Of a stretch of 64,000 nucleotides of DNA, positions 9,640 through 62,600 are shown piece by piece. Both the position numbers and the translations under genes were made by a program. Position 1 is the first letter of the stretch. The number at the start of each line of letters is the position of its first letter. Source of the DNA: Styela clava (Eukaryota); assembly GCF_964204865.1 (NCBI RefSeq), contig NC_135260.1, positions 6,758,001 through 6,822,000 on the forward strand, read 5' to 3'. A model generated the notes under the pieces. The model had not been told where the DNA came from, did no database searches, and saw only the letters and a program-made list of their open reading frames with translations.

Positions 9640-9740
9640 TCACCTGACTACGGTACGCCATCTAAAAATTACCGGTACGTCACAGTGACGTAATAGAGCT
9701 CTTCAGAGCCATAGCGGTACCGGGTACCGGTACTTGCATT
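9640..9740 (-). promoter_or_regulatory. Candidate promoter / first mini-exon for the minus-strand gene cluster
   Basis: On the minus strand, TTTTTAG|ATGGCGTACCGTAGTCAG|GTGAG (YY1-like ATGGCG, donor at 9643). The stretch also has the palindrome TACGTCAC-A-GTGACGTA and clustered TACCGGTA/TACGGTA words. Confidence 0.45.
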
Positions 9741-11702: not shown

Positions 11703-12045
11703 CTGTGTTTCCCCGAAAATAAGACAGGGTCTTATTTCAATTTAAAAATTCTCTAAAATTATCACTAGTACTTATTTTTGGGGATGCCTTTTATTTTCAT
11801 TTGTCAAAAACAAAATTACAAAGTATAAAGTTACGAGATTTTTAAATATACTTACTCACTTTTTATTTGAAATAACTGCTAAATATAGATTATAATCTTT
11901 TTAAACGTGTATATATATGTCTTGCTATCGAATAGTTAAAAAAAAGTTTGTGCTATCGACTAGGACTAGGTCTTATTTTAAGGAGAGGGCCTATATTGAA
12001 ATCATTCAAAAATTCAGGCTAGGTCTTATTTTCGGGGAAACACGG
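11703..12045. mobile_element. pogo/Tigger-like MITE (copy at 29330-29666)
   Basis: TIRs C(T/C)GTGTTTCCCCGAAAATAAGAC / GTCTTATTTTCGGGGAAACACGG, with TA at the left flank. Confidence 0.75.
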
Positions 12046-13530
12046 TGTGTATGATTGATCCCCTCTTGGTTTTCATGTCTGCAGACATGACAAACGCATG
12101 CGTTTCAATTTTCCCAATATTAAGTCTCAATGAAATATTTCAGACATTCAAAATCGGAAAAACACATTTTCCTGCATATTTTTCTGGTACATTATCCTGC
12201 CACAATTACATTTTAAAAGAATCAATCTTGCTACTAGCTTCAAAAATATCACATCCTTTCTCCTAGATAATTTTAACTGATTAATGATTTTAAATATGGT
12301 TGTTAGATGAGACAATTTTGCAAGGCGAAAGATTTCTTTAAAAAACTAGCAGCCACCGAAAGTTTTTCCTGGGTTAGAAGCATATCGTGTCCGTGTGATA
12401 GTGTTACTTTACAACTCTTTGGTAAAATTGTCTTGTATTGAAACGCTTGGTCACTGTGAATAAAATGTTGATCCCATTCAATCAATCAATCAATCAATCT
12501 TTTTTGTTATCGCAGAATTGTCGAATTTGAAAATTGACTTTGTTGTTGTGTGATTGGGATAGTCTTTTTTCCACATCAACTTTCGCCGCTGATACCTTTG
12601 CTATTTGCCAACATGTCGTCACCCGTGTACTGTACTATGTACTCTTATGTATCACAGTATTGACGCGAATATATTTTATGCAATGTTCTAAATATAGATG
12701 TTCTGAACGACCTTTTTACAAAACAATATCAATGGCTTCAAAAAACGTTGATCATTTGAATAACCAGGAAAAATGTCAGATACATTTTAGTTCGTTGTTC
12801 ATTAATATTTGAATTGTGATTAAAGTAAATAATATCTCAATAAACTTAAGAAGACAGCGAATAATGTTTGGCGAAGCATTTTGCTATCTGTTCCGTTCTG
12901 TTGTTTCGAAACGTTTGTCAACGAAGTCATTAACAATGTGTGTTTATGTGGGACTTTCTAAACAACCTCTACTCAATGAGAAATATACTTCGATTCCCCT
13001 TTTTAAAATTCAAATATAATGAATTGCGCCATGTTTTGCTAATATACAGAAGGCGTTCACGAGATATGGCGTAATCTTCAGACAAAGGCGTAAAGAATGT
13101 CACGCGATACGCCTGAATGTTGACGAACAATGATAACAGACCATGTCTGGTTTCACTAGAATGTTGGTGTTTTTGAATCCCAAACAGAGATAAATAATTT
13201 CAGACATTCTAACCTTATTTAAATGTAATTTAGCAACCTATTGTCCTCTATGCACAGTGAGATTTCTTGTCACATAAACCGTACAAGTTTGATTGTCTAC
13301 TTTTATCTTCGAAGATAGAAATTCTGTATAGGGGGTCGACTCATTTATTACTGCGCATATTATGAATTGAACCCAAAAACTTCCCCTGGTAGTTTCACAA
13401 GGTATTCGAAATCACGATATACCTGATCGAACTCGACGTGGTTATAGTGGCAACTATATTAGAGGACGTTTCGAGCCACGGTGTTCTATTTCTTGGTATC
13501 TTCTGAGAAAGCTATATACGTGAAATGATA

Positions 13531-23100: not shown

Positions 23101-23206
23101 CAAACGCAACCTTGCTCGCTCGTGATTAGGAAACTCTCAGGATTTATACGGCTCGAGTATGCCAATGAGATGATAGAAGCCTACGTCGACGAAACAAGCC
23201 TATAAG

Positions 23207-23800
23207 CAGGGTTGCCATACCGTGCTTATTTCTAAGATTGGTGCTTATTTTCTAGCGTGTGTCTTATAAAGTAACGATGTGCTTATTTCTAAGAAAAGTG
23301 CTTATTTTTGAGTTACGTGCTTATTTTGTCTTAGAAACATGGATGACTTGTTCATGTTTTGCGAACAAAGCTTCCGTAGAAACGAGGGACGATGTATTTT
23401 TATTATACGCAACGCGTTTAATATAAAATTATCATTTTGGGTTAGATGGCTGCGCATCTCATTGAATATGCGCGGACGCCCTTTGGGTTGTTGTTTCCTG
23501 TGCAAGATGTTGAATGCTGGATGTTTATTGTGTGTACCTGCCTATTTTTCTGTATCTTCTTACATTTTAGAAGTTGCGTGTGGCCGTTATTTAATGGTTT
23601 TCCATGGCCTTGCGCGATTTCGGGTCTGCATGCAACCTTGTTCGAAGCGACTTCTAATAGTAAAAGGTTGGAGTGCGGAAGAGACTTGTGTATGATTCCT
23701 TTCACATTTTTAAACCGCCTTTCTGCCGTTGTTAAGTACCCCCCAAAATAAACTTTAGACACCAGTGCTTATTTTTGGCTCTAGACCGATGGCAACCCTG
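23207..23800. mobile_element. hAT MITE present only in unit A
   Basis: TIR CAGGGTTGCCAT / ATGGCAACCCTG with a perfect 8-bp TSD CCTATAAG (23199-23206 and 23801-23808) and subterminal GTGCTTATTT repeats. Unit B has the empty site at ~40481. Confidence 0.9.
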
Positions 23801-25536: not shown

Positions 25537-26090
25537 TAGGATAGGATTTCGCCTACATATTTATCCCGGGGAGATGAAAGCCGCTAAAACGGCTTAAGCA
25601 TATGACGATCCACGACCTCTCGTTAGGTTACCAGTCCTTGTCGGGTATGCGATTAGTTGGCCAGTTATATATTTCGGTGACCGTACATTTGAACCCACGT
25701 ACATTTGAACCCATACATTTGCACCCGTGTATCCGCGAGTTAAATCTATATGAGGGTGCAGAAATCCATAGGTTAGGGTTAGTATGGGTTCAAATATTCG
25801 CAAAACAAAAAAAATTCCATAGGTGAAATAGTATGCAGGTGCAATTGTCGTGGGTTCAAATTACGGGTTCAAATGTTATAGAACCATATGTTTCAGTTGC
25901 ATGGGCTTGATGGTGGAGGAAGCGTGACCGACCAGCGGTTACGTGAAACACCCTACGGCAGTGAGGAGTGCAGGAATCCTCTCGCACATATTTGTCTCCC
26001 ACGGAATTTGAACCGGCGAACACACGCAGGGTAATCAGAGCTGCGGTGGCGAGCGTATTCCCAATGCTTGGCAGTTGACACGATGCTCGT
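25537..26090 (-). mobile_element. tRNA-SINE interrupted by a MITE (~25675-25885)
   Basis: SINE 3' part at 25537-25672 and 5' part with a B-box-like GGTTCAAAT at 25893-26090. Between them is an element with ACATTTGAACCC / GGGTTCAAATGT inverted ends and TTAGGGTTAG. Confidence 0.6.
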
Positions 26091-26414
26091 CTGTGGATCC
26101 GCGTACATAAAATCCTGTAGCAAGAGTAAAGATGGTCATTCTAAAAGATAATAAAGACTTGGTTATAGTAAAGCGTATAGTAAAGTGTGACTTTTGAATC
26201 AGATAAAATAGTAAATAGTAATCTCTATTCTTGTTATAGCATCTTTGTGATCCACGCGATCCACGAGCAGAAAGCATAGAAGAAGGAAATATAGTAAGTG
26301 GGAATCCCGACTGACCTATCCTATCCTAGATTTCCAGCCCGGACGTGCGAGAACCATTACGCAATCGATTAAACCGTCCAATCACACTTCTACAGCATAA
26401 ATATGCTACTAAAC

Positions 26415-26600
26415 TATTAACGACTGATGCCCTTTAACAGTATTGAAGTTACGGCGAAATGCTATTCTACTATTAAAAGGCAACAGTCGTCATGTGTTTA
26501 GGACTAGGTAGCATTTCGCCGTAAGTTCAATACTGTTAAAAAGCGTCAGTCGTTAAATTTTTAAATAGCATTTCACCGTAACCTCAATACTGTCAAAAAA
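26415..26600. repeat. ~45-bp inverted repeat plus a third, direct copy
   Basis: TAACGACTGATG...AACAGTATTGAAGTTACGGCGAAATGCTA pairs with TAGCATTTCGCCGTAAGTTCAATACTGTT...CAGTCGTTA. Confidence 0.7.
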
Positions 26601-26794
26601 CGCAACCAGGATGTGGTTACCAGTTACACATAACTTTGCCATATCACATATAGGATATACTGCCAAATTTAGACACACGAATGTTTCATGCCATACGCGT
26701 TTATTGCGTACAGCAGTTGACTGTATTTACAATAGAGTAATGCTCAAATATATGGACTCGAAAACTAAAACGAAATATTTTACCAACAATGTAC

Positions 26795-27110
26795 CTTTCC
26801 CCGAGCATCGACTTCCTTGTTTACTTCGTGACATTGGCCAATCAGCAAGATGCAAAAAATGACGTAACAATGCTCCCTTTTCGCATCCGCTCAGACACTT
26901 CTCTCAGACAGATTTTCAAGCGTGATCGTAAACATTACCTCGTTTTTGAACTCTATTCGTTAGTTTTCAGTTGTGTTTCGGAAACGTAAATGTAAGTCAG
27001 ATAATTCAATGATCACTCTGTCTTTCTAGGAGTTTTAATTTATTTGCAGTAATAAAAATTAGTGTAAAAATAGCTGTTATGGACTAGGCTAAAATTCTTT
27101 ACCGGTACTT
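26795..27110 (+). repeat. Interspersed repeat homologous to 24995-25340 and 41497-41715
   Basis: Shared CCCCGAGCATCGACTTCCTTGTT...GCCAATCAGCAAGATGCAAAA... Confidence 0.7.
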
Positions 27111-28399
27111 TTAAAAAACAAATTATTGTATGCCATGAATCATAATGATGGTTTGAAACACATACCCCATTTTACAGACGCCAACTCGCAAAAGTACTCT
27201 TAAAATAGCCCGGAAAATTTTGCAATGGTAAAGTATGGGAAGAAAGTCATATCCTGAACAAATATGGCGCTGTGAAACAGCAACTTGTGATACGGTAACT
27301 CACCAGTATCTGTCCTAGATTTTCCAAGTTCTGTGACGATGGTTAAACGTGAATTGAAATACCAAATGATCCGAGTCACTACTGTAATATCAGATCCGGC
27401 TAAGCGCGAGATCCACTTGCGTTCGCGACCGCTCACGTCGACCGTTTGCGCTCGCAACAACAACGAATAACAAAACGATCCATAAGTCCACTTCGTGTCT
27501 AATAAAGTTATCTCAAGCAGAAACAAAAATTGATCATAAAAATGACGCTTACGAGACATACATACTGGGATATTAATATGGCCGGAACAAATAAATTCGA
27601 ACAAAAAGTTACCCATAGTAAAAATGAATCAAATATTGTAACATAGTTTCTTGAAGAGCGATGCTTGGATATGAAGCGTTCCGTTTCTCAAATTTTTTTC
27701 CGTCTGTCCAAGTTTGATCTAAAGACCGAAGAATTCGCATTGGGGTGCAAAGGTATTGTTGGATACCTCAAAATCAGATTTCCTACCCTTCATTATACAA
27801 ATTATATAGATCGCATATAAATGCACATTTCTGGACTAATAAAACAACGAGTCCCTCTGGAATAAATTTTCAATAGAAGGCCCTTACAAGTTATATGTAT
27901 CTTTTTGATCGATTTTTGTTTTCTGTATACACATGAATGTAAGACGAAAGACAAACAAAATAGTACTTCGGAGATTTTTTAACGCGTTCTGCTATCTTAC
28001 TTTGAAAAGTATTCACGTCGTCAATATTTATCAACTGACTGTGAATTGAAAATAATATCTTTCTCACAAACCACTGGATTGTAAAAGGAAGAAAGACTTG
28101 TATATTATTCGAAAATCTGATGTTTACTTTTTATGATTCAAGTGTTGTAGACCGGTTGTAATTTTGTTGACAGAGAACTTATCTGTAAATTCATCATTTG
28201 TAGATAGAAAACTCGTCACGATATCAGATTTTATTGAAATTGGCAGATAGTCAAAATTAAAAAAAAAGAAACAGAACAGGTTATCATAAGCCCGTGACAC
28301 CAAAATTCCAAACGATCTAAAAAAATATGATAGACAAGAGAGAAATTAAACCTAAAGGACAAATTTGAACATGCCTGTTTCATTCATCATTATAAAATA

Positions 28400-28572
28400 A
28401 TTGCTGGACTCCTCGCCGTCGTAGGGTGAAGTACATGCTTCCGAAAACAAATAAATAACTAATCCCATACCCGACATGAACTGGTAACAAGACAAGAGGC
28501 CGTGGTTCGCCACATGATTAGGCCGTGCTATCGATTTTCTTCTTTCAGGGGATAAATATAAAAATCCCATTC
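28400..28572 (+). mobile_element. SINE copy
   Basis: Family body and tail as at 14716-14858 and 46737-46962. Confidence 0.6.
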
Positions 28573-29673
28573 TATATAGCCGTATTAATTATAGTCCGGA
28601 CACAGCGATTCAGTAACTTTATATTATGTATATACCCATCATATTGATAAATTTACGGGTCAAGTCATTTTTATTTGGACAAATCGAATTTATATATATT
28701 TGAAGAAAAATAGTTTATTCAGTACAGAGAAAAATCAGAAGGAGCATAGCTGATATAGCCATTTTTTTTGAAAACATCGGCATTTTTTTGTAATGCTACA
28801 ACCTTTTAATCAATTCTTAAAATCTGGTACACCCCGCCCTTCCTACAGTTTTAATACGTAAAAAACTCAATATTTAGAAGTCATATATATATATATATAT
28901 ATGTTTACGTTGGCGCAATAGTTTATTATTTAGTTAATGGGACCGTTGCTATTGGATTCCATCGGCCAATGGTTATTTTTGGGGATTTAATTTCAATGAG
29001 TGCAGACAACACTTGTTCGGAAAGGTATGTCGTATGGCTCAATGGCTGTAGGCATTCGTACGAGAATGGCGACATCTTTTTGTGAAAGATTGCGATACTC
29101 GGGAACTTCTAATAGTGCTACCTAAAATCAGTTGTAGTTTTTATATGTTTTGAACTTTGCCTTTCGTACAGGATCTAATTTTAATTCACCAGTTATGTGT
29201 TTAAGAGCAACCTTTCCATTTGTGAATGACTGAACGACCCATATTAGAAAACTAAGATTCTGATATTCAACATCCGAAAAAAAAAAATAGGCTCCGAAGT
29301 TGTTTAGTAGTAGCACATCGAGATGCTTACCATGTTTCCCCGAAAATAAGACAGTGTTTTATTTCAATTTACTCTCTAAAATTATCACTAGTACTTATTT
29401 TGGGGGATGCCTTTTATTTTCATTTGTCAAAAACAAAATTACAAAGTATAAAATTACGAGATTTTTAAATATACTTACTCGTTTTTCATTTAAAATAACT
29501 GCTAAATATAGATTATAATCTTTTGAAACGTGTATATGTCTTGCTATCGAATAGGTCAAAAAAAAGTTTGTGCTATCGACTAAGCCTAGGTCTTATTTTA
29601 AGGAGAGGGCCTATATTGAAATCATTTTACAAATCCAGGCTAGGTCTTATTTTCGGGGAAACACGGTGTGTAC

Positions 29674-42300: not shown

Positions 42301-42671
42301 ATATAGTCTAGGGCTCTAGGCTAAGCCTACGTGAGCCATATACCCTTTGATTATCCTGCGCGGGAGCTTACAGACATTTTTGCCTGGCCTAGGATAAAGC
42401 CGAAAAGCTATACATTCTGACATTAAAATTTGAGAAAAAATTATCTGAAATATGTCTGTGTAAAATGCAATGTTCTTATTAATATTTACAATAAACATGA
42501 GAAATGTTATATTGATAATAGGCTTTAAGTTTATAGGGGGAAGTTTCCTGAGTTCAAAGGCCGGGGAAACATTGATCACGCGTAAAGGCCGTACTAATTA
42601 TTTTTCAGTTGCGATGTAGGCTCTGATTTTATGAAAATTAAGGTCGCGAAAAAAAGTTTGGGAACAAATGA

Positions 42672-48177: not shown

Positions 48178-51100
48178 TTAATCTCTAGCTACAACTTTCA
48201 ATTTGAATTCTTTGATAGGACGAATACCCAAAGCAAACGACAGTTCCAGCGGTGGTTTCTAAATTTAACGAAGATTAGTGACATCATTGCCTATATTAGC
48301 ATGTTACTAGTCAGTGGTTCAGGCTCCTAAACCTAGGCTTGTGACTTTGTGAGACTCAGATTAGATGAGTCTGGGTTCAAGTCATTTTCATTTAGTTGAC
48401 CTTAGTATTTGATAAATGGTGATCGATGACTTGACCTGTCCCAACACTGTTACTACAAAATAACTATCAGAATCTGATATATTTGTATTGTAGTTACTTA
48501 CTACAAAAGAGGATTTTACACTTGCAGATGTTGCAGTGGGTACCATTAAATTTAGAATTTTACATACCGGTAATTCATCACACTGACCAGATAATTCAGA
48601 ATATCAATTTTACATGGGATCGAAATAAAAAGCAAGAGTCATTCTCATGCCATGTCAATATTTTCTCATTTTATTAATTTTTTTCTGTTCAATGATTGTC
48701 GCAATGTGAAAAACATACTCTTCATTAAATTGCTGATGCACAGAGCATGATGAGACACAAGTCAAGTGAAATGATTTTTGAACTGAAAAAACTAATCTAA
48801 ATGAGCAAATTTCTTTCTGAAAGACGAGACACCACTCATGAAAAACGAAGTCATTTTCATTTTTTAGGTTCAAGCCTCACCATACTGATGTTACAGGACA
48901 AATTCATCCAGATGATAAAAACAAAAGTTTATACTTACAGGTGTGTCTTCAGAGGGCATAATCTTGAATTTATGTAAAATTTGACAAAAAGCCATTTTGA
49001 TTTCCATTTCAGCAAATCTCAATCCAATGCAGTTACGAGGTCCCGCACCAAATGGTTGAAACACCATCGGATCAATTTGTGACATGTCTTCCATTCTAAA
49101 AAACATATTCCGAGTTTTAATTGAGTGAGTGTTGTGATATAATGTCCTAGAATGTAAGACTGTTTTGATTTATTTATTGCAATAATACACAACATGTTTT
49201 TACAGAGTAGCCATTTTTCAATAAAAATAAAATTATTTTGTTCCTCAACCATTTATTGGATGTTCATATTGACTTCAGAGTGAGGGAAGGAGATTTCTAC
49301 GGTCAATAAGACAACCACAGCCTCATTCGATTACCAGTCCATGTATGGAAATAGTCAACTAAAAACTTGTTTCATATGCATTACCTTGATGGTGTAGCAA
49401 GCTATGACAAAATAATGGTTATGTCCTACGGCAGCAAGGAGTTCAACATACCCTTGCGGCACATAAATAACAAATGATACAAACCTGCCAACCCGGGATA
49501 TATAGTCAGAGAGATGTCAAAAAATGTATCAACAATTGAGCCACCTTGCTGCACACATAACACATGATATGTCGCAAGATTTATTGTTTACCTGTCAGGT
49601 ATAAACTCCCATGGTTTGTCCCAAAACTCTGGATCATGAGCAAGACCGAATGTAGGAAATTGCACTGTTACACCTTTAGGAATTGTAAAACCATTCACTG
49701 TGGTTTCTTTTCTGCAGACTCTGGAATTTCTACAAACACAGAACAAAAATTGAGATAAACAACAAGATAAAATAATAAATCAATCCTAAATAACTAGCTC
49801 ATATACTTTTGTCCGAGCAAACTGTCAATTTACTGCTGTCTAAGACATATACCGGTAGTTCAAAAATATTCAAATCCAATTTAGCACTGTTTTGCATTAT
49901 ATTTAAGGCATGAAGATGATAAAAACATTTGATACTGAGAAAAAAGTAAAGTCAAAACTTGTTTGATGGACACAAGACAAAAAAATACTTCTACTATTTA
50001 CTAATGGACAAGATGGATGATTGTCAATAAATATAAAATACTCACACTATAATTGGCATATATAGTCTCAATGATTCATTCAAACACATGCTGAGATATT
50101 TCATATTATTGACACTTTCATAGTCGAATCTTCCCTAAAATACAATAACATTGAAATTAGAAGTTGAAAAAAGATTTCAAAAAAAAAATTTGATTTATAA
50201 AAGCGAGTTGATAAAAAGAATTTCGAATTTACTATCCTGGAACCCTTACCGATATATTTTACAAGAAAATTGTTAAAAATGAGAAAAACACATGAAAGTT
50301 AGTAAACCAATCACCTGCTAACAAAAAAACAGGCAATTATTAATGCAGGTACCAGATAGAGATTAACAATTTAAGGTAGTTAAAATCACCATAGTCAGGA
50401 CGTAGCTCGCTAGCAAAATAATAACAGATAAAATTCACTTCTCTCACACACTCCTGGTGAGCACATAGTTTCAACATACCTTTGCTTGAGAAGCTTCATC
50501 CATTTCTTTTCTAAGTTTATCTTGGACATCTTGATGAATTGCAAGATTATAAGCAAGAAAAGTCATTGTATTTGCTGTATTCTCGAACCCAGCTCCAATC
50601 ATGAGCATTGCATTCCCAATCAACTCTTGTCGGTTCAAACCTGGCACAAGAAAGCTAAAGTCATTAAGCGTTCCAAAAAAGTAGACAGTCTGCTGTTTTT
50701 TAGTATAACCAAATATTAGATCAGGTTTGTAATTGCATTCAGTTTTGTTTATGTTGATAATCTTTTAATCTCGAAAAGTAACTGAAATGTGCAAAAGGTG
50801 ACTCTAGTTCTCATGACCAGTAAAAACTCCACAAAGTCCAAACTCCAACTTGACTGATCAGATTGCAAGACACCGAGAAATGAGTCAAACAAAACAATGC
50901 ACAAAAGTTGAATCACCAAACCACATTAGTCAGAATAAATCAGATCAATTTGTGCTCTACATTTATTTCATTTAAAGGTTCCTACTTATGACTCAATTGT
51001 TAATTTTTTCAATCCTATTTGATTTATTTCACTAAACTGATACTGTTACTAGTCATTTTGAAATTTCCCAAAATTTAAAATATTTCCCGATATTAACTCA

Positions 51101-54100
51101 AATCAGGTCTACATGAAACTTCAAACTTGAGTAAGTCTTAAGTAAAAAAATCTCAAGATTCAAAACTTGTGACTTACTGTGTCCAAATCCTGTTTCAGGT
51201 AAGACAAAACCACAAATACAACACTTTAAATAAAACTTCATCTTTACCTCTTTCTGAATCTTCATTTATTTTATCATCCGCGACTTCAGCATCCAACATA
51301 AGTTGAAGTAAATCTTTGGCAACTTCTTCCTGATGTGAAAAAATATTATTAATGATGAAGATTGTAGATGATTGCCACTTAAGAGTGAGAACAGGGTCAG
51401 TCCTAGCAAATCAAGCTACAACTCCATAACTGGCATAACACATATCTGAGGTTTAGGAAGCGTTGTTGATTATAAAACACTTAATTCTTTTCAATACCTG
51501 AAGTCCTGATTGCCAGGATATAAGGGAATTTCCAATAGGACACAAATTAAAGAAAAATTAAAAGTTTTGTATAATTTATAAATACACACAAATTTTAATT
51601 TATTTGATTTAATTTATTAAATAATGAAAAAGATCTATCTATCGCCATCTTTGTTTAAAAGCATACGATAAACTTCCGAAAACTTACCTGTCCCTTTTTT
51701 CTTTTTTCAATGACTGCATTGGTAAAATTACTGAGATATTGTAACGCTTTGTAATCAAATATACTGATGTCTAATTTATTGCAAATCCATTCAAATGGTG
51801 GACAGATGACTAAAAAAATAATGTAAACTTGTAAAATGTGCATTTTTGATATGACTTTGTGTCCGAATAGTCCAATAATCATAAAAATTTCAAGAACTTA
51901 CAACACATGAATGCAGTAGGACCAGCGAATCCAGTAGCGAACAGTTTTCGAACTTCCAATACCAGTTGGGAATCTTTCCCATCAACAGATTGAATATGTG
52001 CTCTGGTTCCCAATGCAGCAGAAACTATCATATCCAGCGATAAATTTGAAAATAATCTGGATGTAATAATGTATATTAGACTACCAGTATATTTGTTCCA
52101 AAATAGATTTTGATAATTATGTATAATTTTTTATTGTCATTTTTTAAAATTGCACTTCTCAGAAAATCAAGAAGGCGACTTTGGCTATATTAAGCAACAT
52201 AGAAGCAACAATTACAAGGCAAAACTTTTATATATTCAAATTTCAAGGTAGTGTATGTAGTATGCACTTACTTTCTTGCAACAAATTCTCCGCTTTCATT
52301 TTTTAACTTTCCCTCTAACACTGCAACAGTTTGACCTGTACAATTTTCAACAATTGAGAACATCTGTTTCAGCTTTGATATGGAAAATGTAGGACTTAAC
52401 GTCGAGCTGAAATAAGACAAGTTTTTGCAATGAGTAACCATCATAGTCGATTATAGTTATGGTTACGCTGTCTTTTCATTTAGACTCCTCAGTCCTCACC
52501 ATCATAAGGTTATGAATACCTCCACTCACTACGCATCTGAAGCGAATAACTGGTTAGGTAATTCAATACCCTACATCAGGGGTTGGCAACCTAAGAACGC
52601 ACTATAATCCGGCCCGCGACGCTTCACTAAATTATAGTAACAAAACATTCGTTTCCATGAATATATTCTTTAGACAAAAATATATTATGACCTAACAATT
52701 ATATAATTCACAATTACTCGTTTAATGAGCATATAATTTAATTATAATTAAGCAAATGGCAACAAATCGCAGAAAAGTTGATGCTAAGTGCAAAGGGTTC
52801 AATGGCGCTGGAAATATTCAAATGAAATTTTATGAGATGCAATGAGGAAATAAATCTATATTCTATTTGAGAGATGTATCCCTGCTTGATTTTTATTATA
52901 AAAAGTACCATCCATTCGGTTTTTCAACTTTCTAAAAATATGTGCGGCCCGCCAATGACTTGCAACCTTAATTTTCGCCCACGAGCGACATTGCACGAAT
53001 ACTTAAGCAACACATAAACCCCTATTTAAAAATATCAAAATATATTGTACCGGGTTCTTTTCCATTTCTTATTTCTAGCAACTAAAACTCCATGATTCAT
53101 GTCTTTGCCATTCATTGTCGTCAGCACTCTCTAAAAACAAACATAATTTCAGCTTGTAAGATGCTTCCTCTGTTACCAGACTGAAAAATGTATGAAGTGG
53201 TTTGACAGTTTTACCATTTCAAATGCAACACTACGGATGCGAAAAGCCCACCAGTCCCAATACATGTGAATATCTACATATGAAATGCATCTATCCTAAA
53301 AATCTTCAAGGATGACATATTACAAAAATTCCCACTATCCATAGCTGAATGTGCTGAAGTTAAGTAGTTCTTACCATTCTATCAGGAAAATTCTGGAATT
53401 CTTTTGTGTAAATTAGTCGCATAATTTCAAGATCATGTATCGTGATTGCAGGTGTAAGACCAGCATATCCCCTAAAATATAGAAATAATTTATTAAAAAC
53501 AATTGTCAATGTGAATAACCAGCTAACTTGAAGATATTTAATAATTATCAATGTTGATAGAAAACAGGATGAAATCACCAATCTTTTGATACCAATAGGT
53601 TCGAAGGGTATGAAACATATAACACGAATCAGTGCTGTTTCTGAGATGGAATTTGAAGAGAATGTTCCATGAGTTTAATAAATAATTGAGTCAAAGGATG
53701 GTGGAGCTGTCAAACATCTTTCAGTTCATTCTCCTAAGGATTATTCTTAATTTTTAAAGTTTACTTACAAGTTACAACTCCTAATCATTATAATGACTTC
53801 AAAAAATAAAAAAACAAGAATTGTCTATGAGAATTATCAACTCTTTTCACTCACCCATAGATCAGTCCATATTTCTTTTTCTGTTCTAAATTTCTAGTAA
53901 ACATTTCCTGAAAATGTAATAATGAAAAAAGTGAAAATTTAAAAAGAAAGTGTATATCATAAATATCAAATAAACCGTCAATTTAAAAATATTCGGTGTC
54001 AACAAGATTCTAATTTGAAAACTTAAGTAAATCTTGAAAATGCATCAACCAACAGTAGGAATATAATAATTAAAAACATATAAGATCTTGAGACTGTAAG

Positions 54101-55032
54101 TCTCTTAGCATTTTTTATTGAGTATTATTTTAAAGGGTATTGCTTTGCAAAGATTCATCCTATAGGCATGACCAAGCTTATTCAACATTTCAAATAGAAA
54201 AAAATACTTCAGAGGAAACTAGTCCTAGCCAACCCTGTCAACCAATCTACAAATATTCAACCTTTATTACTTACTTTTGAAAATGCACCTGCCATATTTC
54301 CGATATTCAGTATAGTAGGTTTGTCATGAGGTATATTGAGGTTTGCGAGAAACTGCCATTTTCTATGTATGTAGTATCTTGATATAAGCAAGAAATTCCA
54401 TTAAACAAATGATAAAAAGCAAAAAATAGTAATTTGAAATTGATCAAAAAATGTGAATTTAGATATGGTTACTAATTGTAAATTTTGATATCCAACCAAA
54501 AATTAGAGAATTGAACAATGTGTCACTAAATTTTTATTTTACAAAGAAAATTCAACATTTTTTGCTTCAAACAAGGCTATAGGCAAGTGGCCATACATAA
54601 AGAGATACTATTAGCAGAAGCAGACTTGGTGTGAACCAGATTCATAGTTCATTGCAAATTTATTTTATAAATATTTCACAAATATTCACAGCAGCACTAT
54701 AGTTAATAATCAACAGCTCGAAATTAAAATATATTCTGAAAAGATAGCAATCTGAAATACAGAAATAGCTTTTCTATAAAGTCAGAAAGTGCACCACACG
54801 AAACAAGGATGCACAAGAACATGGAGAGTCACTGGGTTTGGCATGTCTTAAATACTTCTAATTCAACATTGCATTCTCAATTTCCTACACCTGTAAATGA
54901 GCTGAAAACCAGAGAAAATTGATCTCTTAGATAAGTAGATATAAAACAGAACAACAATCACCTGATAAGAGCCAGTATTGCAACAACAAGTCCCAAAGAT
55001 TCAAAAGATATCACTGACGACAACCAAGACAT
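48178..55032 (-). CDS. Cytochrome P450, clan 3 (CYP3-like), complete, ~507 aa
   Basis: Exons 55032-54962, 54377-54275, 53907-53855, 53471-53375, 53130-53051, 52406-52272, 52056-51902, 51809-51688, 51329-51248, 50640-50480, 50134-50046, 49729-49592, 49095-48939 and 48258-48178 (1524 nt). Motifs: WKRTRSTLSPTFS, AGFENT, ESLR, FIPDR, and heme loop PFGAGPRNCIG. Several exon sizes (71, 53, 161, 89+138=227) match my recollection of vertebrate CYP3A. Confidence 0.92.
52577..52990. mobile_element. Degenerate hAT MITE in an intron of the minus-strand CYP
   Basis: CAGGGGTTGGCAACC start and GGCCCGC subterminal motifs. Confidence 0.55.
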
Positions 55033-55921
55033 TGTATTTGCTCAATCAAATTATTTTCATATATCTGTATAGAAAATTTTAAGATTTAAGTAATAGCTTA
55101 CCGGTATACCGGTACTCTACAGTATTTTTTGAAATACCAGTACCGGTAGTCTACTACCAAAATTATTCTACTTTTTTACTAAATAAACTTCAACCAATTC
55201 TATGTGAGTAATATAAAAGTCATAAATCAATTTCGACAAAATGGAATATAAATCCATAAAAAAATTGAGTTTGATTGAGAACTGCAAGTTGCAGACATCC
55301 TATCTCACTATCTGCGCCGGATACACTACCGCTGTCTGGCTGTTATTTCAATATTTGGGTTGCGTACAGCTCAATGCAATGAGATGCACCATGCAAAGAT
55401 ACCGGTATATGATATACATTACCAAGTACCGGTATTTATATACCTACATTAGGCCGCTACGTCATTTGTGTTATTGCGATATAAAGTATTGGGAATTTCC
55501 CCAATTGTTTACGTCATGTCAGGACCGGACGATTGCGCCATCATTTATCAGCCGAAAATAGAGCGCTGGCGATTGCGACATCGTTTAAAGCTTACGTCAT
55601 TAATGACGTATTCTGCACTGAGTATATTCCCATAATACAATCTAGCTGTAGCACATATACCAAGTCGCAAACTACCTAAGTAAACATTCGAAAACCAACA
55701 TAATTTCAGCCCTTGTTTTATAAAATTCATAGGGGAATACCCCACAGCCAACACAATACGGCTGCTCGATCAAGGTTGATACGTGATCAAAATTTGGACA
55801 TAACATGAAAAATTAATAATTCGAAAACACTCACAATTTCGAATATTGGAAAAAGTGGCAAAAGTGCATAACGGCATTAAAAAAAATACACGAGTCGAAG
55901 AGTGGGTTCAAAAGTTTATAT

Positions 55922-58818
55922 TAGGCCGTGAGCCGAGGCCATGAAAAACGCCTAGAAAGTGAGTTTCGTAGCGCACATCAGGTAACTACCTGAAAATGAT
56001 TTAAAAATGTTCCTTAAAAATGTAGTAACAAATATTGCCTTGTTCCCACTTCCAAAAGTTGCACGTTTTACGGAAAAGACGCTTTTACTACAATAAATCT
56101 GTGCTACGATCTGTCCTATATTCTCTACATTTTCGACAATGAACAATGACTTCTGCATGACGTAACAATTGAATCGAATCAGCTGTTAGCGAGCGGATGA
56201 ATATTAGTTATTACTGCTCGACCTTGCGTTGAGTTGGGCAGCCTTTCCATAGCCCTGTTTAGTTATTATTAGTTAAGTTATGCTAAGACGTTGTTGAAAA
56301 ATGTATAAGTAAGTTATTAAACTCTTGTAGATCCTTACAACGGATATGGGCCGTGAGACGAAGCCTTGAAAACGCCCAGAAAATGAGTTTCGTAGCGCAC
56401 ATCTGGTAACTAAATAAATCCTTCAGTTTAGTGTGAAAATGAACATACTGAACGCATTACAGCTTGTTCCACAATCCTGATGCGAAATTGAATATAAGAG
56501 GTTCCCGGAAATTCAATAACCATAAGTTCACAACACATACATAAGAACTATGCAATTCGAGAGCCCTACAGCACACTAACACAAATGTATTCCTGTAATG
56601 TTTTGCCTGACCAAAATCGGACTTCCTCAGTCAATCATAATTTATTAGGTAGATTATGAAAAATATGACATATAAATATGAAATACTTTAATTGTGTGAC
56701 AGGAGTGGCGAGTGACCTCGAAAGCAGCGACACCAACAACGCTGATTCACATTAGCGAATAAATTTTATGTAATAACCACAAGCAGTTTACAACAAGAAG
56801 AGCATAAAAAGCTACATCCATTTTATAGAAGCTATCAAACGTATTTATTTTTAAGCAATGAAGTCACAAATTAACATCGTGAGCACGAAAACACAAATAA
56901 ATCAGTTATTTCTCACTTAGAAATTTACCAGAAAAGTCAAGAAAATTGTACAATATGTACATAACATAGTGAACAGAAATATTACAATAAGTCTTTTTTT
57001 AGTTTATGTGGTTATGTATTTGAACAAAGGCAATATTATTTCTAGAAACAGGACTACGACACTAACAAATGTTCGAAAAAAAAAAAAATAAATGATACTA
57101 CTGATAAATGATAAAAATCAACTGCAATATCTAATTCACTTTCTTCTGAATTGTTTTCGAAATCCACTATCTTGAAAATCGACTTTTCCTCTATAAGTGT
57201 ACTGTGATTTTGCAGTCAATACAAAAACAAAAATCTGTGCAATTTAAGTTGATTTTGGCACACTTGCATAAATTATTTTGACTATTTTTTTTACACTTGC
57301 AGTTTGCCAACTCAAGAACTGATTTGAGGGCCACATGCTTCTTCAGTGAATCATTGTTGGGTATAATCCTTATGTTTGCCAGTGTTAAATAGACGTGCCC
57401 TGGTATCATTTACATTCTTCATATCCTCTTCATACAGTGAACAAACAAATTCCTCAGCTTTATTTATTAATGCCTCGTTAACCTCAAAAGATCTTCATAG
57501 TTGAGAAAATATGAATTGAAAACCACAATGAAGTCTCCAACATGAGTTTAATGGGCAGTTCCAATTGCAGAAAAGTGCTAAAGTATTTCAATATGAATAG
57601 CCCATCTAAGCTGTTTGCAACTATTATGATTCTCATATACCTTTACGCTTCAAGACTTCTTGTTTAATCCATTTTATAGCAGCAGGGATTAGAGCCTGCA
57701 TTAGGTCGGATTGGTGGAACATTGCCGTCTTCTTTTGTCGTACAGTATCTAAAATGAGGAAGAAAATCATATTTGGAACAGCATGAGTGTAAAAATACCA
57801 CTAAATACTAACTAATACCTTGAATAAATAATGCATTTTATCTGATGTACTAAATGAGCGTATGTACTACAGTCCAGCAGTGTTTGCATACCATTACTAG
57901 ACTATATCTACACTAAATTTTGATATATCACAGTCTGAAATGCCCTATGACAGTATGAGTATGGACTATAGGCCTAGACTATATTTTAAAACATCAACTG
58001 TCTGTCTACAACTCGATTTCTCACCTCTCAATCGTTTCCAATGCTACTTTCTTTCCACTCCGGCATAACTTACCGTATCATTGCTTCCCAGGTTCTTGTC
58101 GACTCTATGAATTTAGATTTAGACCAACCGACATTAGTAAAATTGATTATTTTCTTCTCTTTCACACAACCGTGCATTACAGAAACAGCCATTAATTTCT
58201 ATTTCCAAATATGCTGTGGCCTATATAGTAGTATAAGTCTGCTGAATAGTCAAGAAGAGTCATTAAATTAATCATAAACAAAATATCGTTGTTTGTGACA
58301 TATTATTCTAAGTCTAGCCTTCCTTGGAATTACCGCACCGTACCTATTCAACAACGTCTTATGAGCTAGTGCTCAACTAAAATTGCTATTTATGGTAAGA
58401 ATATACAAGTGTTTAATATCTTACTTATACTTTTCAACACCTCCTTAGAATAACTGAACTAATAATAACTGAAAAAACTATGGAAAGGCTACTCAACGCA
58501 AAAGCAAGCAGTAGTAGTACATCTGATATTCATCCGACCACTGGGTTTTCACCTACAGCTGACTAATTCGATTGTTACGTCATGCAGATGTCTGCGTTCA
58601 TTGGCCCATGATACCGAATAAGCAGAGAAAGTAGGACAGATGGTAACACATATTTATTGTGGTAAAAGTGTATTTTCTGTAAAACGTGCAACTTTTGTAA
58701 GTGGGAACAAGGCAATATTTGTTACTAAATTTCTAAGGAACATTTTAAAATCATTTTCAGGTAGTTACCTTATGTGCGCTACGAAACTGAAAGATAAATG
58801 GCCTCGGCTCGCGGCCTA
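55922..58818 (-). mobile_element. Decayed Academ-superfamily DNA transposon
   Basis: ~400-bp imperfect TIRs beginning TAGGCCG(T/C)GAGCCGAGGCCA and a 3-bp TSD TAT. Minus-strand transposase remnants are INKAEEFVCSLYEEDMKNVNDTR (~57400-57470) and a Cys-rich tail ELANCKCKK...CKCAKINLNCTDFCFCIDC (57191-57320). Confidence 0.8.
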
Positions 58819-59647
58819 TATGTAATGTTGGGTTTATAGAACTTTTTTGAGTATTATCGCCGGGTCACGATTGGGTTTGACAACCACGGGTTAAAGATAT
58901 TACAGATTTTCATCCGGTATTGTGAGCACCGAACCGAAAGTGTTTTAGGATAAGACAGTTGGGATAAGATAAGGAACTGTGTTTTTACACAAAATGTATT
59001 TGATTATGTTTTTTCAGTTTTATCAAAATAAATGTGTGATGAAAAAAAATTATAAAACTTGCATCTTAATGGACTTAAATGATCAATGTTACTCACATTT
59101 ATCCAATATGGAACAAAATGCCATTATATGTTTATTGTGTACAGCAAGGTATAATATTTGGCTGGAACGGAATGCTACCATTGACGCAATCGTCTGTCAT
59201 GACATGACGTAAACAATTGCAGAAATTCTCAATACTGCAATACTTCGATATATCGCAATAACACAAATGGCCTAGGGGCCCAAGCCTAATGTGGGTATAT
59301 GCATGCTTGATGGTATCGTATATCTTTGCATGGTGCAACTTACGAAGCTGTATACAACCCAAATACTGAAATAACAGTGGTGCAGGTAGGAGAGATGCAG
59401 TTGCAACTGCAGTATTCAATCAAAACTCAATTTTTTTTTTATAAATAACCCATATATTTCATTTTGTTAAAATTGATTTATGAGTTTTATATTACTCACA
59501 TAGAATTGGTTGAAGTTTATTTTGTAAAACAGTGGAATAATCTTCGTAGTATTTCAAAAAATACTGAAGAGTAGACTATAAGCTATTACTCAAATCTTAT
59601 AATTTTCTATACAGATATATGAAAATTGATTGGATTAAGCAAATACA

Positions 59648-62600
59648 ATGTCTTGGTTGTGGTCAGTGATATCTTTTGAATCTTTGGGACTTGTTGCTGC
59701 AATACTGGCTCTTATCAGGTGATTGTGGTCTATTTTATATATTTTATCCAAGAGATCAATTTTCTCCAGTTTTCAGTTCCTTTTACTGGTGTCGAAAATT
59801 GAGTTTGAGGCAAAAAATTTTAAATTTTTTTTGTATGAAAAAAAAATCGTTAACTGATTGTTCAATTCTCTTCAATTTGTTGTTTGATGTCAAAATTAAA
59901 TATTACAATTAGTAACAATATCTAAATTTGCCTTTTTCAATCAATTTCGAATATTTAATTTTTGTTTTTCATCACTTGTTCAATGGAATTTCTTGCTTAT
60001 TTTCAGATACTACATACATAGAAAATGGCAGTTTCTCGCAAACCTCAATATACCCCATGACAAACCTAGTATACTGAATATTGGAAATTTGGCAAGTGTC
60101 TTTTCAAAAGTAAGTAATAAATGTTGAATGTTTGTCACTTGGTTGACAGGGTGGGTCAGAACTACTTGGTTTTGATCAAGCATATTTTCTATTTGAAATG
60201 TTGAATATGATTGGTCATGCACATAGGATGAAGATTTGCAAAGCAATACACTTAAGTTAGAAATAAGAAATTGCTGAGCGACTTACAGTTTCAAGATCTT
60301 AAATGTTTAATTATTATATTCCTACTGTTGGTTGATGCATTTCAAGATTTACTCAAATTAAAATCTTGTTGAAACAAAATATTTTTTAATTGATTGTTGA
60401 TTTGATATTGACCGTATGACTTTCTTTTTAAATTTTTTATTTTTTTATTATGTTTTCAGGGAATGTTTAATAGAAATTTAAAACAAAAAAAGAAATATGG
60501 ACTGATATATGGGTGAGTAAGGAGAGTTGATAATTAATATTGACAATTCTCTGATTTTTCTTTTCATAAAGATTGGGGGTTGTAAGTGAACTTTAAAAAT
60601 AAACCTTTAAAAAATGTACTGAAAGATGTTTGACCAACAGCTCTTGTGAGTTATCACAATCCACACACGCCATCCTTTGACTCAATTCTCTTCATTATTC
60701 AAACTAATAGAACTTATCATCTTCAAATTCTGCCTCAGGAAACTGCACTAATTTGTGTTTTATGTGTCATACCCTTCGAAAAAATATTGGTATCAAAAGA
60801 TTGGTAATTTCAGCCTGTTTTTTTTTATCAAAATTGATAATCATTAAATATCTTTTAGTTAGCTGGATAGGGTTGCTCGATAATATGCACGTATTGACAA
60901 TTTTTCGATAAGTCATGTCTATATTTCAGGGAATATGCCGGTGTTACACCTTTAATCACGATACATGATCTTGAAATTATACGACAGATATACACAAAAG
61001 AATTCCAGAATTTTCCTGATAGAATGGTAAGAACTACTTAACTGCAGCACATTTTCCTACGTGTGTTAAGACTCTTATCTACTTCACCATCAAAGCCATG
61101 CATGATGGGGACATTGAGCAACTAACTGTTCATTGCTGCCAATATTCTAACGGTTATTCACATTATTGCATTCGAAGTTACATTTTCTGCCTTTATTGCA
61201 TTTGCCGATACGACATTAATGTGATGAATTAGTTTGCCTTTCACCGCACAGTTTTTCGATTCTCGGAGCAATTTGTGACAAGCGAACCTATAGACCAGGA
61301 GGCAAGTCTCGACCTGTATTTTTGTCGTCATATATAGGAGTGAAAATGCTGACTCACGAATGTAGGTTGTTGCAAAAGGATTTTAATTGACTTTTCTGAC
61401 AGCAATGGATATTCGTCCGCAAAGCTCAACCGAAAATATGCAATTTTTTTTTGAAATAATCATTAAATATTGAACAGGGGGGTCCGCAGACCCCAGTTTG
61501 AAAAACCCTGGTTTATGGGACTCTTAATGACCCGAATCATTTAAACCAGGGGTGTACAACCTGTGGCCCACGGGCCAAATTTTGGCCCGCAAGAAAAACT
61601 TGTGGGGTCTGCGGAGAAGCATCACTTTTGAATGTTGTGATGAGTGATGAACATGAGTTTTAAATTTAATCAAGTATGTGCGAGTAATTCGAATTCTATT
61701 AAGTTGTAATGCCTATATCTGAGCTCGTGCAAACTGAAGAACGCATGTCACAAGATCTATAACCAGAATTTGTGTGTGCGCAACTGCTAGAAAGACTATG
61801 TTAAGTAAAGGTGCTGCCCGCGGTTTCATTCAGTTATTTATATATGGCCCTTGTGTATAAAAGCCCTTGTGCACATCCCTGATTTAAACTAAATGTCTAA
61901 ACTCTCGAAAAGCCAGCAAGACTTAATTGAAGATTTGAAGATGTTTTGAGCCACACTTTGAAATATTGAAATAATTAATTCTGGTGATATTATTAACCAC
62001 AAATTCAGTAGCTTTTCAAAAGACTATAAAATATGTTTTGATCCATATTTGTCTTTAGATTCAGATTACCATTGAATCATTATTGGAGAGACTCTGGACT
62101 CTAGGTTTTTGTATTCAATGAAGTTGCTGGATTTGATTTTTAAAATATGAAATGTACGATATTGAGACATAAAACTACTGATATTTATAAGAAAAGCGGA
62201 ATTTTGTATCTCTTGGTTTTTTTTTATAGAGTGTGTTGGTGACAATGAACGGTAGAGAGATGAATCAAGGAGTTGTATTCGCTAGAAATAAGGAATGGAA
62301 AAGAATGCGGTGAGATATTTTAATATTTTTATGCAATTATTTTATGCTTTCATATTCATTCATTTTATTCCCAGAATAGATATAAAGCATAGTGTTCTTT
62401 TATCTTCCCAAAACATTTTATTGTGTTCTTCTCAGTAGCCGATTTGTGAGATTGTCCCAAAATAGAAGTAGGAAATGTCCCGTTATTTGAGTGTAACAAA
62501 ATTTCAAATCATAATTATTTGAAAAGTTTTATTCATTCTTGAAAGAGGAAAATTATTGTTTTATGCCCAAATAACACTGAAATCATGATATTAACATTGA

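What the first reader, a model, noticed from the sequence alone, without database searches (positions are those of the whole stretch)
55095..55440. Stacked TA-anchored micro-insertions at a promoter: probable serial Tc1/mariner excision footprints
Seen by aligning the two CYP 5' regions. Copy A reads gct-TA-ccggTA-TA-ccggTA-ctc where copy B (reverse complement of ~59540-59590) reads gct-TA-TA-gtcTA-ctc. Copy A reads gaaa-TA-ccagTA-ccggTA-gtcTA-ctac where B reads gaaa-TA-ctac. Copy A reads aaga-TA-ccggTA-tat where B reads aaga-TA-tac. These indels are 3-4 nt plus a duplicated TA. Known: Tc1/mariner elements duplicate TA and leave TA-(terminal bases)-TA on excision. A pogo-like MITE family in this window ends in CGG. 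Inference: repeated insert-and-excise events in open germline chromatin, a promoter-targeted mutational process that writes TACCGGTA palindromes (close to Grainyhead-type ACCGGT cores) and adds CpGs. Similar clusters occur at 9648-9735, and TAGACTA/TAGGCCTA-type words at ~42305-42330 and ~57895-57985.
Basis: partly seen in the sequence, partly recalled or inferred. Interest (0 to 1): 0.8.

Follow-up and report, generated by a model that had tools for sequence, protein, structure and literature searches.

The report
Stacked transposon excision scars, TACCGGTA
The small TA-flanked insertions in front of one of two duplicated cytochrome P450 genes are most likely scars left when cut-and-paste jumping genes with CCG...CGG ends left the site. 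The same scar, TACCGGTA, occurs about 30,000 times in this sea-squirt genome, often in stacks right beside such elements.

Summary
The 5' flank of P450 copy A (55099-55434) carries clean TA-anchored extra blocks that copy B lacks. TACCGGTA is the most over-represented 8-mer in the window: 10 found against 0.5 expected. Across the genome it occurs 30,656 times against 4,861 for a reversed control.

The footprint reading is largely supported:
- Three TA-duplicating element families end in CCGT...ACGG, and one of them lies in this window.
- CCGGTA, CCGTA and GGCCTA blocks appear as insertions at bare TA sites inside individual copies of repeat families.
- In a very young family, 7 of 22 left ends abut one to four TACCGG/TACGG units (P about 2e-14).
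- Stacks mix 6-bp and 5-bp units. That fits two repair outcomes of a CCG overhang and does not fit hexamer slippage.

Promoter or open-chromatin targeting is unsupported. TAGACTA/TAGTCTA words are not enriched. The Grainyhead idea has no support. The polarity at the P450 locus itself could not be tested, because the genome holds only these two copies and the public reads showed no variation there. No allele pair with the element in one and the scar in the other was found.

This is a striking new instance of a known kind of event.

The parts
55099..55114 (.). TACCGGTATACCGGTA: two +6 units (CCGGTA) on adjacent TA dinucleotides, 67-82 bp upstream of the ATG of P450 copy A. Copy B reads TATAGTCTA here.
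55135..55153 (.). TACCAGTACCGGTAGTCTA: three stacked TA-bounded units, 17 extra bases in all. Copy B has a single TA at 59550-59551. TACCAG may be a CpG-decayed TACCGG (inference).
55400..55407 (.). TACCGGTA. Copy B aligns with TA only, in a region of poorer alignment.
55427..55434 (.). TACCGGTA, a second unit 27 bp further on.
54963..55032 (-). First coding exon of P450 copy A (MSWLSSVISFESLGLVVAILALIR, then a GT donor). ATG at 55030-55032.
   Evidence: P450 identity of the gene from the exon at 50471-50647, PF00067 E 3.4e-10
59572..59580 (-). Copy B counterpart of the first site: TATAGTCTA, a 5-bp GTCTA block at TA. B's ATG is at 59648-59650 on the plus strand.
55924..58816 (.). 2.9-kb non-autonomous DNA transposon between the two P450 genes: TA|GGCCGTGAGCCGAGGCC...GGCTCGCGGCC|TA, with terminal inverted repeats of about 400 bp. 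It is high-copy and young, and is absent from one public contig.
   Evidence: X1 record 2 joins 55916 to 58817; 967 candidates, a 100% identical copy on C17; 10 of 10 copies flanked by TA
57969..57976 (.). TAGGCCTA inside that transposon. Six bases here are absent from a minority of the family's copies and from the X6 contig.
   Evidence: (table 4)
58071..58077 (.). TACCGTA inside that transposon. Five bases (CCGTA) are absent from 35-100% of the copies seen in four runs, which read TA.
   Evidence: (table 4)
58459..58466 (.). Two bare TA dinucleotides in the transposon that carry a CCGGTA insertion in other copies: L004 position 489, and the loose-end variant TTACCGGTAACTG seen in runs X1, X2 and X5.
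   Evidence: (table 7)
9649..9734 (.). Cluster inside a MITE copy: TACGGTA (9649), TACCGGTA (9670), GGTACCGGGTACCGGTAC (9717-9734). Related copies in L001 read TA or TACCGGTA at the first site and TA at the second.
11703..12045 (.). MITE of the CCGT...ACGG family B (CCGTGTTTCCCCGAAAATAAGAC ends). Its left end is mutated to CTGTG. A duplicate lies at 29330-29666.

Best explanation
The blocks are excision footprints of TA-duplicating cut-and-paste DNA transposons whose ends read 5'-CCGT...ACGG-3'.

Insertion duplicates the target TA. On excision the transposase leaves the first bases of each end on the flanks as 3' overhangs, TA-CCG on both sides. End joining then has two easy outcomes:
- The self-complementary terminal CG of the two overhangs pairs, and the one-base gaps are filled. 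This gives TACCGGTA, a gain of 6 bp.
- All three bases overlap with a central C:C mismatch. This gives TACCGTA or TACGGTA, a gain of 5 bp, as in the Sleeping Beauty 'cag/ctg' footprint.

Each footprint creates a second TA, and re-insertion into one of them followed by another excision adds a further unit. Sites that are visited repeatedly therefore build stacks such as TACCGGTACCGGTACGGTA.

Elements with GGCC ends leave TAGGCCTA in the same way.

Shown here:
- TA-anchored blocks of +6 and +5 bp.
- Their status as insertions in copies of repeat families.
- Resident TA-flanked families with matching ends.
- Stacks that abut such elements.
- Genome-wide excess and clustering of the word.

Inferred: that excision made the blocks, the 3-base stagger, the repair route, and that the long alleles in front of P450 copy A are the derived state.
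For: (1) Specificity.
- The genome has 30,656 TACCGGTA against 4,861 for the reversed control ATGGCCAT.
- In a 264-kb sample the word is 9-fold over an order-3 Markov expectation.
- 22 of 45 ACCGGT sites carry exactly T...A flanks, and no consensus extends beyond them.

(2) Matching elements, all flanked by TA in unrelated contexts.
- Family A: TA|CCGTATTTATTCGATTATAACGCG.
- Family B: TA|CCGTGTTTCCCCG.
- Family D: TA|CCGTAAAACCGGCTAAC...GTTAGCCGGTTTTACGG|TA, 1.88 kb with no ORF. At least 22 copies are 100% identical over the terminal 82 nt.
- Sources.

(3) Stacks against elements.
- 7 of 22 family D left ends abut one to four TACCGG/TACGG units, against a background of 0.002 per TA (P about 2e-14).
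- Several more copies have units within 50 bp.
- One copy has stacks on both sides (L066 and L087).

(4) Polarity from repeat families.
- In the 2.9-kb element, both arms of the window copy read TA where L004 and a subfamily carry CCGGTA, at two different TAs (table 7).
- CCGTA at 58071 and GGCCTA at 57969 are missing from other copies.
- In a MITE, two copies read AAAATTACGTCAC where the window copy reads AAAATTACCGGTACGTCAC.
- L001 position 1442 shows a clean 6-bp indel against its paralogue.

(5) Mixed stacks.
- The first 4.7 Mb of C1 holds 18 TACCGGTACCGGTA and 7 TACCGGTACGGTA (about 0.5 of the latter expected), and 3 TACCGTACGGTA.
- Loci L061-L065 show long mixed arrays.

(6) Clustering. 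Among 100 consecutive sites, 14 gaps are 100 bp or less against 0.76 expected, and 5 gaps are exactly 6 bp.

(7) Not a general indel bias. A 13-kb tandem duplication at 96% identity has 51 indels, and none is of this type.

(8) The chemistry has precedent. The canonical Sleeping Beauty footprints are 'cag' or 'ctg' between the TA duplicates (PMC5224488).
Against: - No site was found with the element in one allele or paralogue and the footprint in the other.
- At the P450 locus the polarity is unknown. Only two copies exist in the genome, and the public contigs that cover 55382-55587 and 54989-55951 match the reference.
- Intact CCGT-ended copies are fairly few. TACCGTRTTT occurs 6,242 times against 3,057 for the control. 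That compares with about 26,000 excess TACCGGTA, so many excision cycles per element or further CC...GG families must be assumed.
- The 5-bp words TACCGTA/TACGGTA are only about 2-fold over the Markov expectation. They are not above the reversed control genome-wide: 52,224 against 54,622.
- The autonomous transposase and its cleavage stagger are unknown.
- GTC-type units have no identified source element.
Confidence: 0.75

Rival explanations
1. TACCGGTA is a selected cis-regulatory palindrome, the site of a dimeric transcription factor, kept in homotypic clusters in promoters. The A/B differences would be site gain and loss.
For: - The word is an exact 8-bp palindrome with strict flanks.
- It clusters within 100 bp.
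- Five copies lie within 400 bp upstream of a gene start.
- ACGTCA half-sites are about 4-fold more frequent within 100 bp on either side of the sites: 0.45 against 0.11 per 200 bp, from 22 sites.
Against: - The sites arise as clean 6-bp insertions at TA inside transposon copies and directly against transposon ends. Selection for binding sites does not explain that.
- Copy B's equivalent promoter has none.
- Sites in the sample show no GC or CpG enrichment.
- Mixed 6+5 stacks break the palindrome spacing.
Confidence: 0.05
2. The blocks are expansions of a self-complementary hexamer microsatellite (TACCGG)n by replication slippage, unrelated to transposons.
For: The 6-bp offset is strongly favoured: 5 of 99 gaps are exactly 6, and there are 18 TACCGGTACCGGTA in 4.7 Mb. 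By contrast the 8-bp offset, TACCGGTATACCGGTA, occurs only 4 times genome-wide.
Against: - Most sites are single units that appear de novo at a bare TA. Slippage cannot start from that.
- Stacks mix 5-bp and 6-bp units.
- Stacks abut CCGT-ended elements far more often than chance allows.
- Slippage may still lengthen arrays that already exist.
Confidence: 0.07
3. At this particular locus the long alleles are ancestral, and copy B lost them by TA...TA microhomology deletions, or gene conversion has blurred the history. The stacking in A would then predate the duplication.
For: - Polarity could not be tested: there is no third paralogue and no informative outgroup contig.
- Every block is bounded by TA on both sides, so exact deletion through 2-bp microhomology is formally possible.
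Against: - It would need three or four independent exact deletions in about 340 bp of B, while other indels between the arms are ordinary.
- Elsewhere the same blocks are insertions by majority or outgroup-like copies.
- B carries its own different block (GTCTA) at the first site.
Confidence: 0.1

Closest known systems
Canonical Sleeping Beauty (Tc1-like) excision footprint, TAC(A/T)GTA
   Same: TA duplicates enclose the terminal three bases of the element ('cag' or 'ctg'; PMC5224488). The 5-bp units TACCGTA/TACGGTA here are the exact analogue for CCG ends.
   Different: Here the dominant product is the 6-bp form TACCGGTA. I attribute it to pairing of the self-complementary terminal CG of the overhangs. 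It was seen in a natural genome in tens of thousands of copies, not in an assay.
Tc1 footprints in C. elegans (Plasterk 1991, cited in PMC4423477) and the 6-bp Minos footprints in Drosophila (recalled from memory, not checked here)
   Same: Terminal bases of a TA-duplicating element are retained between the two TA copies after end joining.
   Different: The terminal bases differ. Stacks of several units beside the resident element have not, to my knowledge, been described for those elements.
Genome-wide survey of DNA-transposon excisions in rice (PMC4423477)
   Same: It infers excisions from sequence comparison and discusses overhangs derived from the terminal repeats and microhomology repair.
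   Different: In rice only 8 of 94 excisions left the simple expected footprint, and most came with deletions or filler DNA. Here one stereotyped word dominates and accumulates.
Self-complementary microsatellites
   Same: (TACCGG)n is its own reverse complement and shows 6-bp periodic arrays.
   Different: Units start at single TA sites, mix with 5-bp units, and lie against transposon ends.

Membership tests
Excision footprint of a TA-duplicating (Tc1/mariner/pogo-type) transposon | The extra bases are bounded on both sides by the duplicated TA. | tested here: met
   All blocks at 55099-55434, 9649-9734, 57969 and 58071 and in L001/L004 are TA-bounded. xACCGGTy is specific to T...A flanks.
Excision footprint of a TA-duplicating (Tc1/mariner/pogo-type) transposon | The retained bases match the termini of an element family resident in the same genome. 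| tested here: met
   Families A, B and D have TA|CCGT...ACGG|TA. The 2.9-kb element has TA|GGCC...GGCC|TA, which matches TAGGCCTA.
Excision footprint of a TA-duplicating (Tc1/mariner/pogo-type) transposon | The short (TA-only) state is ancestral, so the block is an insertion. | tested here: inconclusive
   Met for blocks inside repeat families by comparison with other copies. Not testable at the P450 promoter itself.
Excision footprint of a TA-duplicating (Tc1/mariner/pogo-type) transposon | An allele or paralogue with the element in place at the very TA that carries the footprint elsewhere. | tested here: not met
   None found in the window, the 200-kb sample or the laid contigs. The nearest evidence is stacks that directly abut in-place family D copies. 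The X1 allele without the 2.9-kb element reads GTTTATATGTAATG with no GGCC, which is ambiguous between an empty site and repair through the TATAT repeat.
Tc1/mariner/pogo superfamily (for the source elements) | TA target-site duplication and terminal inverted repeats. | tested here: met
   22 of 22 family D left ends, 4 of 5 right ends read, 10 of 10 copies of the GGCC element, and family A 4 of 4 ends.
Tc1/mariner/pogo superfamily (for the source elements) | A DD(E/D) transposase of that superfamily encoded by an autonomous partner with the same ends. | not tested
   The family D copy read has no ORF of 100 aa or more. The genome has 126 pogo-type DDE_1 matches, 3 mariner and 2 weak Tc1 DDE_3 matches, but none was linked to CCGT ends. 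A PIF/ISL2EU-type origin of the GGCC element cannot be excluded.
   No annotation or chromatin data were available. Indirectly, sites show no GC or CpG enrichment, five of the ten sites in the window are not at a 5' flank, and copy B's promoter has none.

The most novel reading that the evidence does not exclude
CCGT-ended elements in this tunicate transpose in a 'stuttering' way. After excision they tend to re-enter a TA of their own footprint, or they prefer footprint TAs as targets. Each cycle then adds one 5- or 6-bp unit next to the element. The arrays would be a countable record of excision cycles. Where they fall in regulatory DNA, as at this P450 promoter, they would steadily add CpG-containing palindromes and change spacing.
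Probability: 0.3. Interest if true: 0.6.

Novelty: new member of a known kind. Interest (0 to 1): 0.45.

Why it matters
Excision footprints are textbook, but they are usually seen one at a time in assays or as messy, rare events in genome comparisons. Here a single stereotyped scar is one of the most over-represented words in a chordate genome and forms stacks beside young elements.

- That gives a sequence-only read-out of how often cut-and-paste elements leave and return.
- It points to a germline end-joining route that uses a 2-bp CG microhomology.
- It marks a recurrent source of 5-6-bp indels and new CpG palindromes in regulatory and other DNA.
- It is also a practical warning for motif discovery in tunicates: TACCGGTA will score as a strong 'motif' for mutational reasons.

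Tried and rejected
(1) A Minos-like model in which CCAG...CTGG ends give a heteroduplex resolved to CCGG. It predicts strong TACCAGTA and TACTAGTA excess. I found 1.4-fold and 0.8-fold, so I rejected it.

(2) Candidate elements TA|CCAGTCC at 10835-14768 and 25629-28486. Their inverted repeat continues outward past the TA, so these are not termini.

(3) The abundant MITE with CCGTAGTATTTG ('family C'). Across 54 ends the conserved sequence continues outward (GGTACTC|CCGAAG), and only 2 are preceded by TA. It is not a CCGT-terminal family.

(4) Paralogue outgroup for the promoter. Only the two copies exist.

(5) Laying public contigs.
- They gave no variation at 55095-55440.
- X2 is identical to the reference.
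- X5 covers only 55382-55587, with the same alleles.
- X1 contigs stop at about 55152.
- X6 covers only the repeat.

(6) Two segmental duplications (window 12-25 kb against 30-42 kb, and C1 sample 4-21 kb against 34-53 kb) were searched for pairs with the element in one copy and the footprint in the other. None was found.

(7) Full-text searches for the word, and for it together with Ciona, returned only primers and barcodes.

Genome-wide statements therefore rest on pattern counts plus 264 kb of sequence.

Full report
**Setting**

The window is C14:6758001-6822000 of a 377-Mb assembly. Earlier notes of this scan name the species as the sea squirt Styela clava. I did not verify that. The window has 35.6% G+C and a CpG observed/expected ratio of 0.85.

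Two P450 genes lie head to head:
- Copy A starts at ATG 55030-55032 on the minus strand.
- Copy B starts at ATG 59648-59650 on the plus strand.
- An exon of A at 50471-50647 matches PF00067 at E 3.4e-10.
- The arms 51553-55560 and 63965-59190 are 80-87% identical.

In the 5' flank, copy A has TA-bounded extra blocks relative to B:
- 55099-55114 reads TACCGGTATACCGGTA, where B reads TATAGTCTA.
- 55135-55153 reads TACCAGTACCGGTAGTCTA, where B has a single TA. This is a clean 17-bp gap.
- TACCGGTA also occurs at 55400 and 55427.

The other indels between the arms are ordinary.

TACCGGTA occurs 10 times in the window against 0.49 expected, and no shuffle reached 10. It is the most enriched 8-mer in the window.

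Independent public contigs reproduce the region. X2 is identical over 54989-55951, and X5 covers 55382-55587 with one difference. The blocks are therefore not an assembly artefact.

**Genome-wide picture**

- The genome has 30,656 TACCGGTA against 4,861 of the reversed control ATGGCCAT.
- In 264 kb (the window plus C1:1.0-1.2 Mb) the word is 9-fold over an order-3 Markov expectation. It is the top word of the form TA-N4-TA.
- The enrichment belongs to the full 8-mer. 22 of 45 ACCGGT sites have T...A flanks, and every other flank pair has 5 or fewer.
- No longer consensus surrounds the word, so it is not part of a repeat.
- Sites are strongly clustered. Among 100 consecutive sites, 14 gaps are 100 bp or less against 0.76 expected, and 5 gaps are exactly 6 bp against 0.08 expected at 10 bp or less.
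- The 8-bp offset seen at 55099 is not favoured genome-wide, with only 4 sites.

**Source elements**

- Tc1-type DDE_3 transposases are almost absent, with 2 weak matches.
- Mariner is rare, with 3 matches.
- Pogo-type DDE_1 is common, with 126 matches, many of them with intact ORFs.

I found three families flanked by TA whose ends read CCGT...ACGG:
- Family A is 636-708 bp.
- Family B is about 320 bp.
- Family D is 1.88 kb with no ORF of 100 aa or more. At least 22 copies are 100% identical over the terminal 82 nt, out of 154 candidates.
- Sources.

A fourth TA-flanked family has GGCC...GGCC ends. Ten of ten copies are flanked by TA, there are 967 candidates, and one copy on C17 is 100% identical. 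One copy of this family lies at 55924-58816, between the two P450 genes. It is absent from a contig of run X1, which joins 55916 to 58817. What first looked like the inner part of the gene duplication is this element's terminal inverted repeat of about 400 bp.

**Link between elements and blocks**

Of 22 family D left ends, 7 are directly preceded by one to four TACCGG or TACGG units. An eighth is preceded by TACCGTTACG, and several others have such units within 50 bp. The background chance that a TA is preceded by TACCGG or TACGG is 0.002, so P(7 or more of 22) is about 2e-14. One copy has stacks on both sides (L066 and L087).

Because every unit contains its own TA, each unit needs an integration event. 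Repeated cutting and resealing at one end would not create new TAs.

**Polarity from repeat families**

In the GGCC element, both arms of the window copy read ...CTGAACTAATAATAACTG... at this point:
- Copy L004 has CCGGTA after the first TA.
- A subfamily seen in three runs has it after a TA 6 bp further on.
- Sources; table 7.

Relative to other copies, the window copy itself carries two blocks:
- CCGTA at 58071. It is absent from 35%, 66%, 94% and 100% of the depth in X1, X2, X5 and X6.
- GGCCTA at 57969. It is absent from 6.5% and 27% of the depth in X1 and X2, and from the X6 contig.
- Sources.

In a MITE family, two copies read AAAATTACGTCAC where the window copy reads AAAATTACCGGTACGTCAC. 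At another TA of that family the three copies read TA, TACCGGTA and TACGGTA. L001 position 1442 shows a clean 6-bp indel against its paralogue.

So the blocks arise as insertions at TA.

By contrast, a 13-kb tandem duplication in the window (96% identical) has 51 indels, and none is of this type. This is a site-focused process and not a general indel bias.

**Stacks are mixed**

The pattern TACCGN{0,6}CGGTA matches 4,179 sites against 1,666 for its control. In the first 4.7 Mb of C1:
- 18 sites read TACCGGTACCGGTA.
- 7 sites read TACCGGTACGGTA, against about 0.5 expected.
- 3 sites read TACCGTACGGTA.
- Source.

Five hot-spot loci show arrays such as TACGGTACCGGTACCGTACCGGTA. Two of them end exactly at a family D terminus.

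Mixed 6- and 5-bp units argue against simple hexamer slippage. They fit two repair outcomes of the same overhang.

**Mechanism (inferred)**

With a three-base stagger, as in mariner and Sleeping Beauty, both flanks carry 3' overhangs reading TA-CCG.
- Pairing of the self-complementary terminal CG, followed by one-base fill-in, gives TACCGGTA.
- Full overlap with a C:C mismatch gives TACCGTA or TACGGTA. This is the analogue of the 'cag/ctg' canonical footprint of Sleeping Beauty (PMC5224488).
- GGCC ends give TAGGCCTA by the same logic.

TAGGCCTA occurs 9,691 times against 2,702 for its control. That count is inflated by a MITE whose terminus reads TA|GGCCTAAGTC.

TACCAGTA at 55135 could be a CpG-decayed TACCGGTA. 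This is inference only, since the word is just 1.4-fold enriched.

**Weak points**

- I found no allele pair with the element in one and the footprint in the other.
- Polarity at the P450 promoter is untested.
- Intact CCGT ends are only a few thousand: TACCGTRTTT occurs 6,242 times against 3,057 for the control. The excess of TACCGGTA is about 26,000.
- The 5-bp words are about 2-fold over the Markov expectation in the sample but level with the reversed control genome-wide, 52,224 against 54,622. That control is richer in favoured dinucleotides, so this test is inconclusive.
- The autonomous transposase was not found.
- The X1 allele that lacks the 2.9-kb element reads GTTTATATGTAATG. That is 5 bp shorter than a simple empty site. 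It could be a TATAT length polymorphism or repair through the TATAT repeat after excision.

**What is not supported**

- Promoter or open-chromatin targeting.
  - Five of the ten window sites lie in a MITE or in the gene body.
  - Copy B's promoter has none.
  - Sites show no GC or CpG enrichment: 0.358 against 0.362 for GC, and 0.88 against 0.96 for CpG.
  - Other hot spots lie beside transposons and tRNA-derived SINEs.
- TAGACTA/TAGTCTA words are not enriched, at 0.95-fold. Their source is unknown.
- AACCGGTT, the Grainyhead-type core, is not enriched.

**Comparison with what is known**

Excision footprints are well known. In rice, only 8 of 94 inferred excisions left the simple footprint (PMC4423477).

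What is unusual here is the scale, the uniformity of the scar, and the stacks beside young resident elements. I did not search the literature specifically for stacked footprint arrays, and none of the papers I read describes one. The searches I ran were for the word itself, the word with Ciona, excision footprints, and Styela clava transposable elements.

**Verdict**

- The footprint reading is supported at about 0.75.
- The promoter-targeting and regulatory extras are unsupported.
- This is a new member of a known kind, of moderate interest.

Noticed in passing
window 55924-58816: A young, high-copy 2.9-kb non-autonomous transposon (TA|GGCC...GGCC|TA, about 400-bp inverted ends) sits between the two P450 genes and is missing from a public contig. 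The family has 967 candidates and a 100% identical copy at C17:7031234-7034126. The allele without it is 5 bp (TATAT) shorter than a simple empty site.
   Followed up: partly
One copy has extra insertions of 630, 602 and 178 bp.
   Followed up: partly
window 23198-23799: A 602-bp MITE with CAGGGTTGCCAT ends and an apparent 8-9-bp target duplication (GCCTATAAG), hAT-like. It is present in only one of the two duplicated segments, so it inserted after the duplication.
   Followed up: no
L038 1625-5716 and L039 1643-5731 (C6:6.14 Mb, C14:0.38 Mb): A 4.09-kb pogo-type element, 99% identical between two chromosomes, with a 692-697-aa open frame and ends TA|GGGTGGCTTACCC...CACCACCC|TA. It is probably active.
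   Followed up: partly
G000:C6:21824814-21839924: Six identical pogo-type DDE_1 matches (403-aa open frames) spaced exactly 2,937 bp apart: a tandem array of a transposase-bearing unit.
   Followed up: no
L061 about 520-620, L062 about 415-505, L065 about 215-300: Copies of a tRNA-derived SINE (B box GGTTCGAATCC; A-box-like TGGCTCAACGG) lie within a few hundred bases of the densest TACCGGTA stacks. Whether the SINE favours such sites is open.
   Followed up: no
window 9680-9700, 55455-55620, 56160-56175: ACGTCA / TGACGTAA-type (CRE-like) half-sites are frequent near TACCGGTA sites: 0.45 against 0.11 per 200 bp, from only 22 sites, some of them not independent.
   Followed up: partly
window 55331-55338: An 8-bp deletion polymorphism (GCTGTCTG, next to a GCTGT repeat) in the copy A promoter in one public run (X1).
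   Followed up: no
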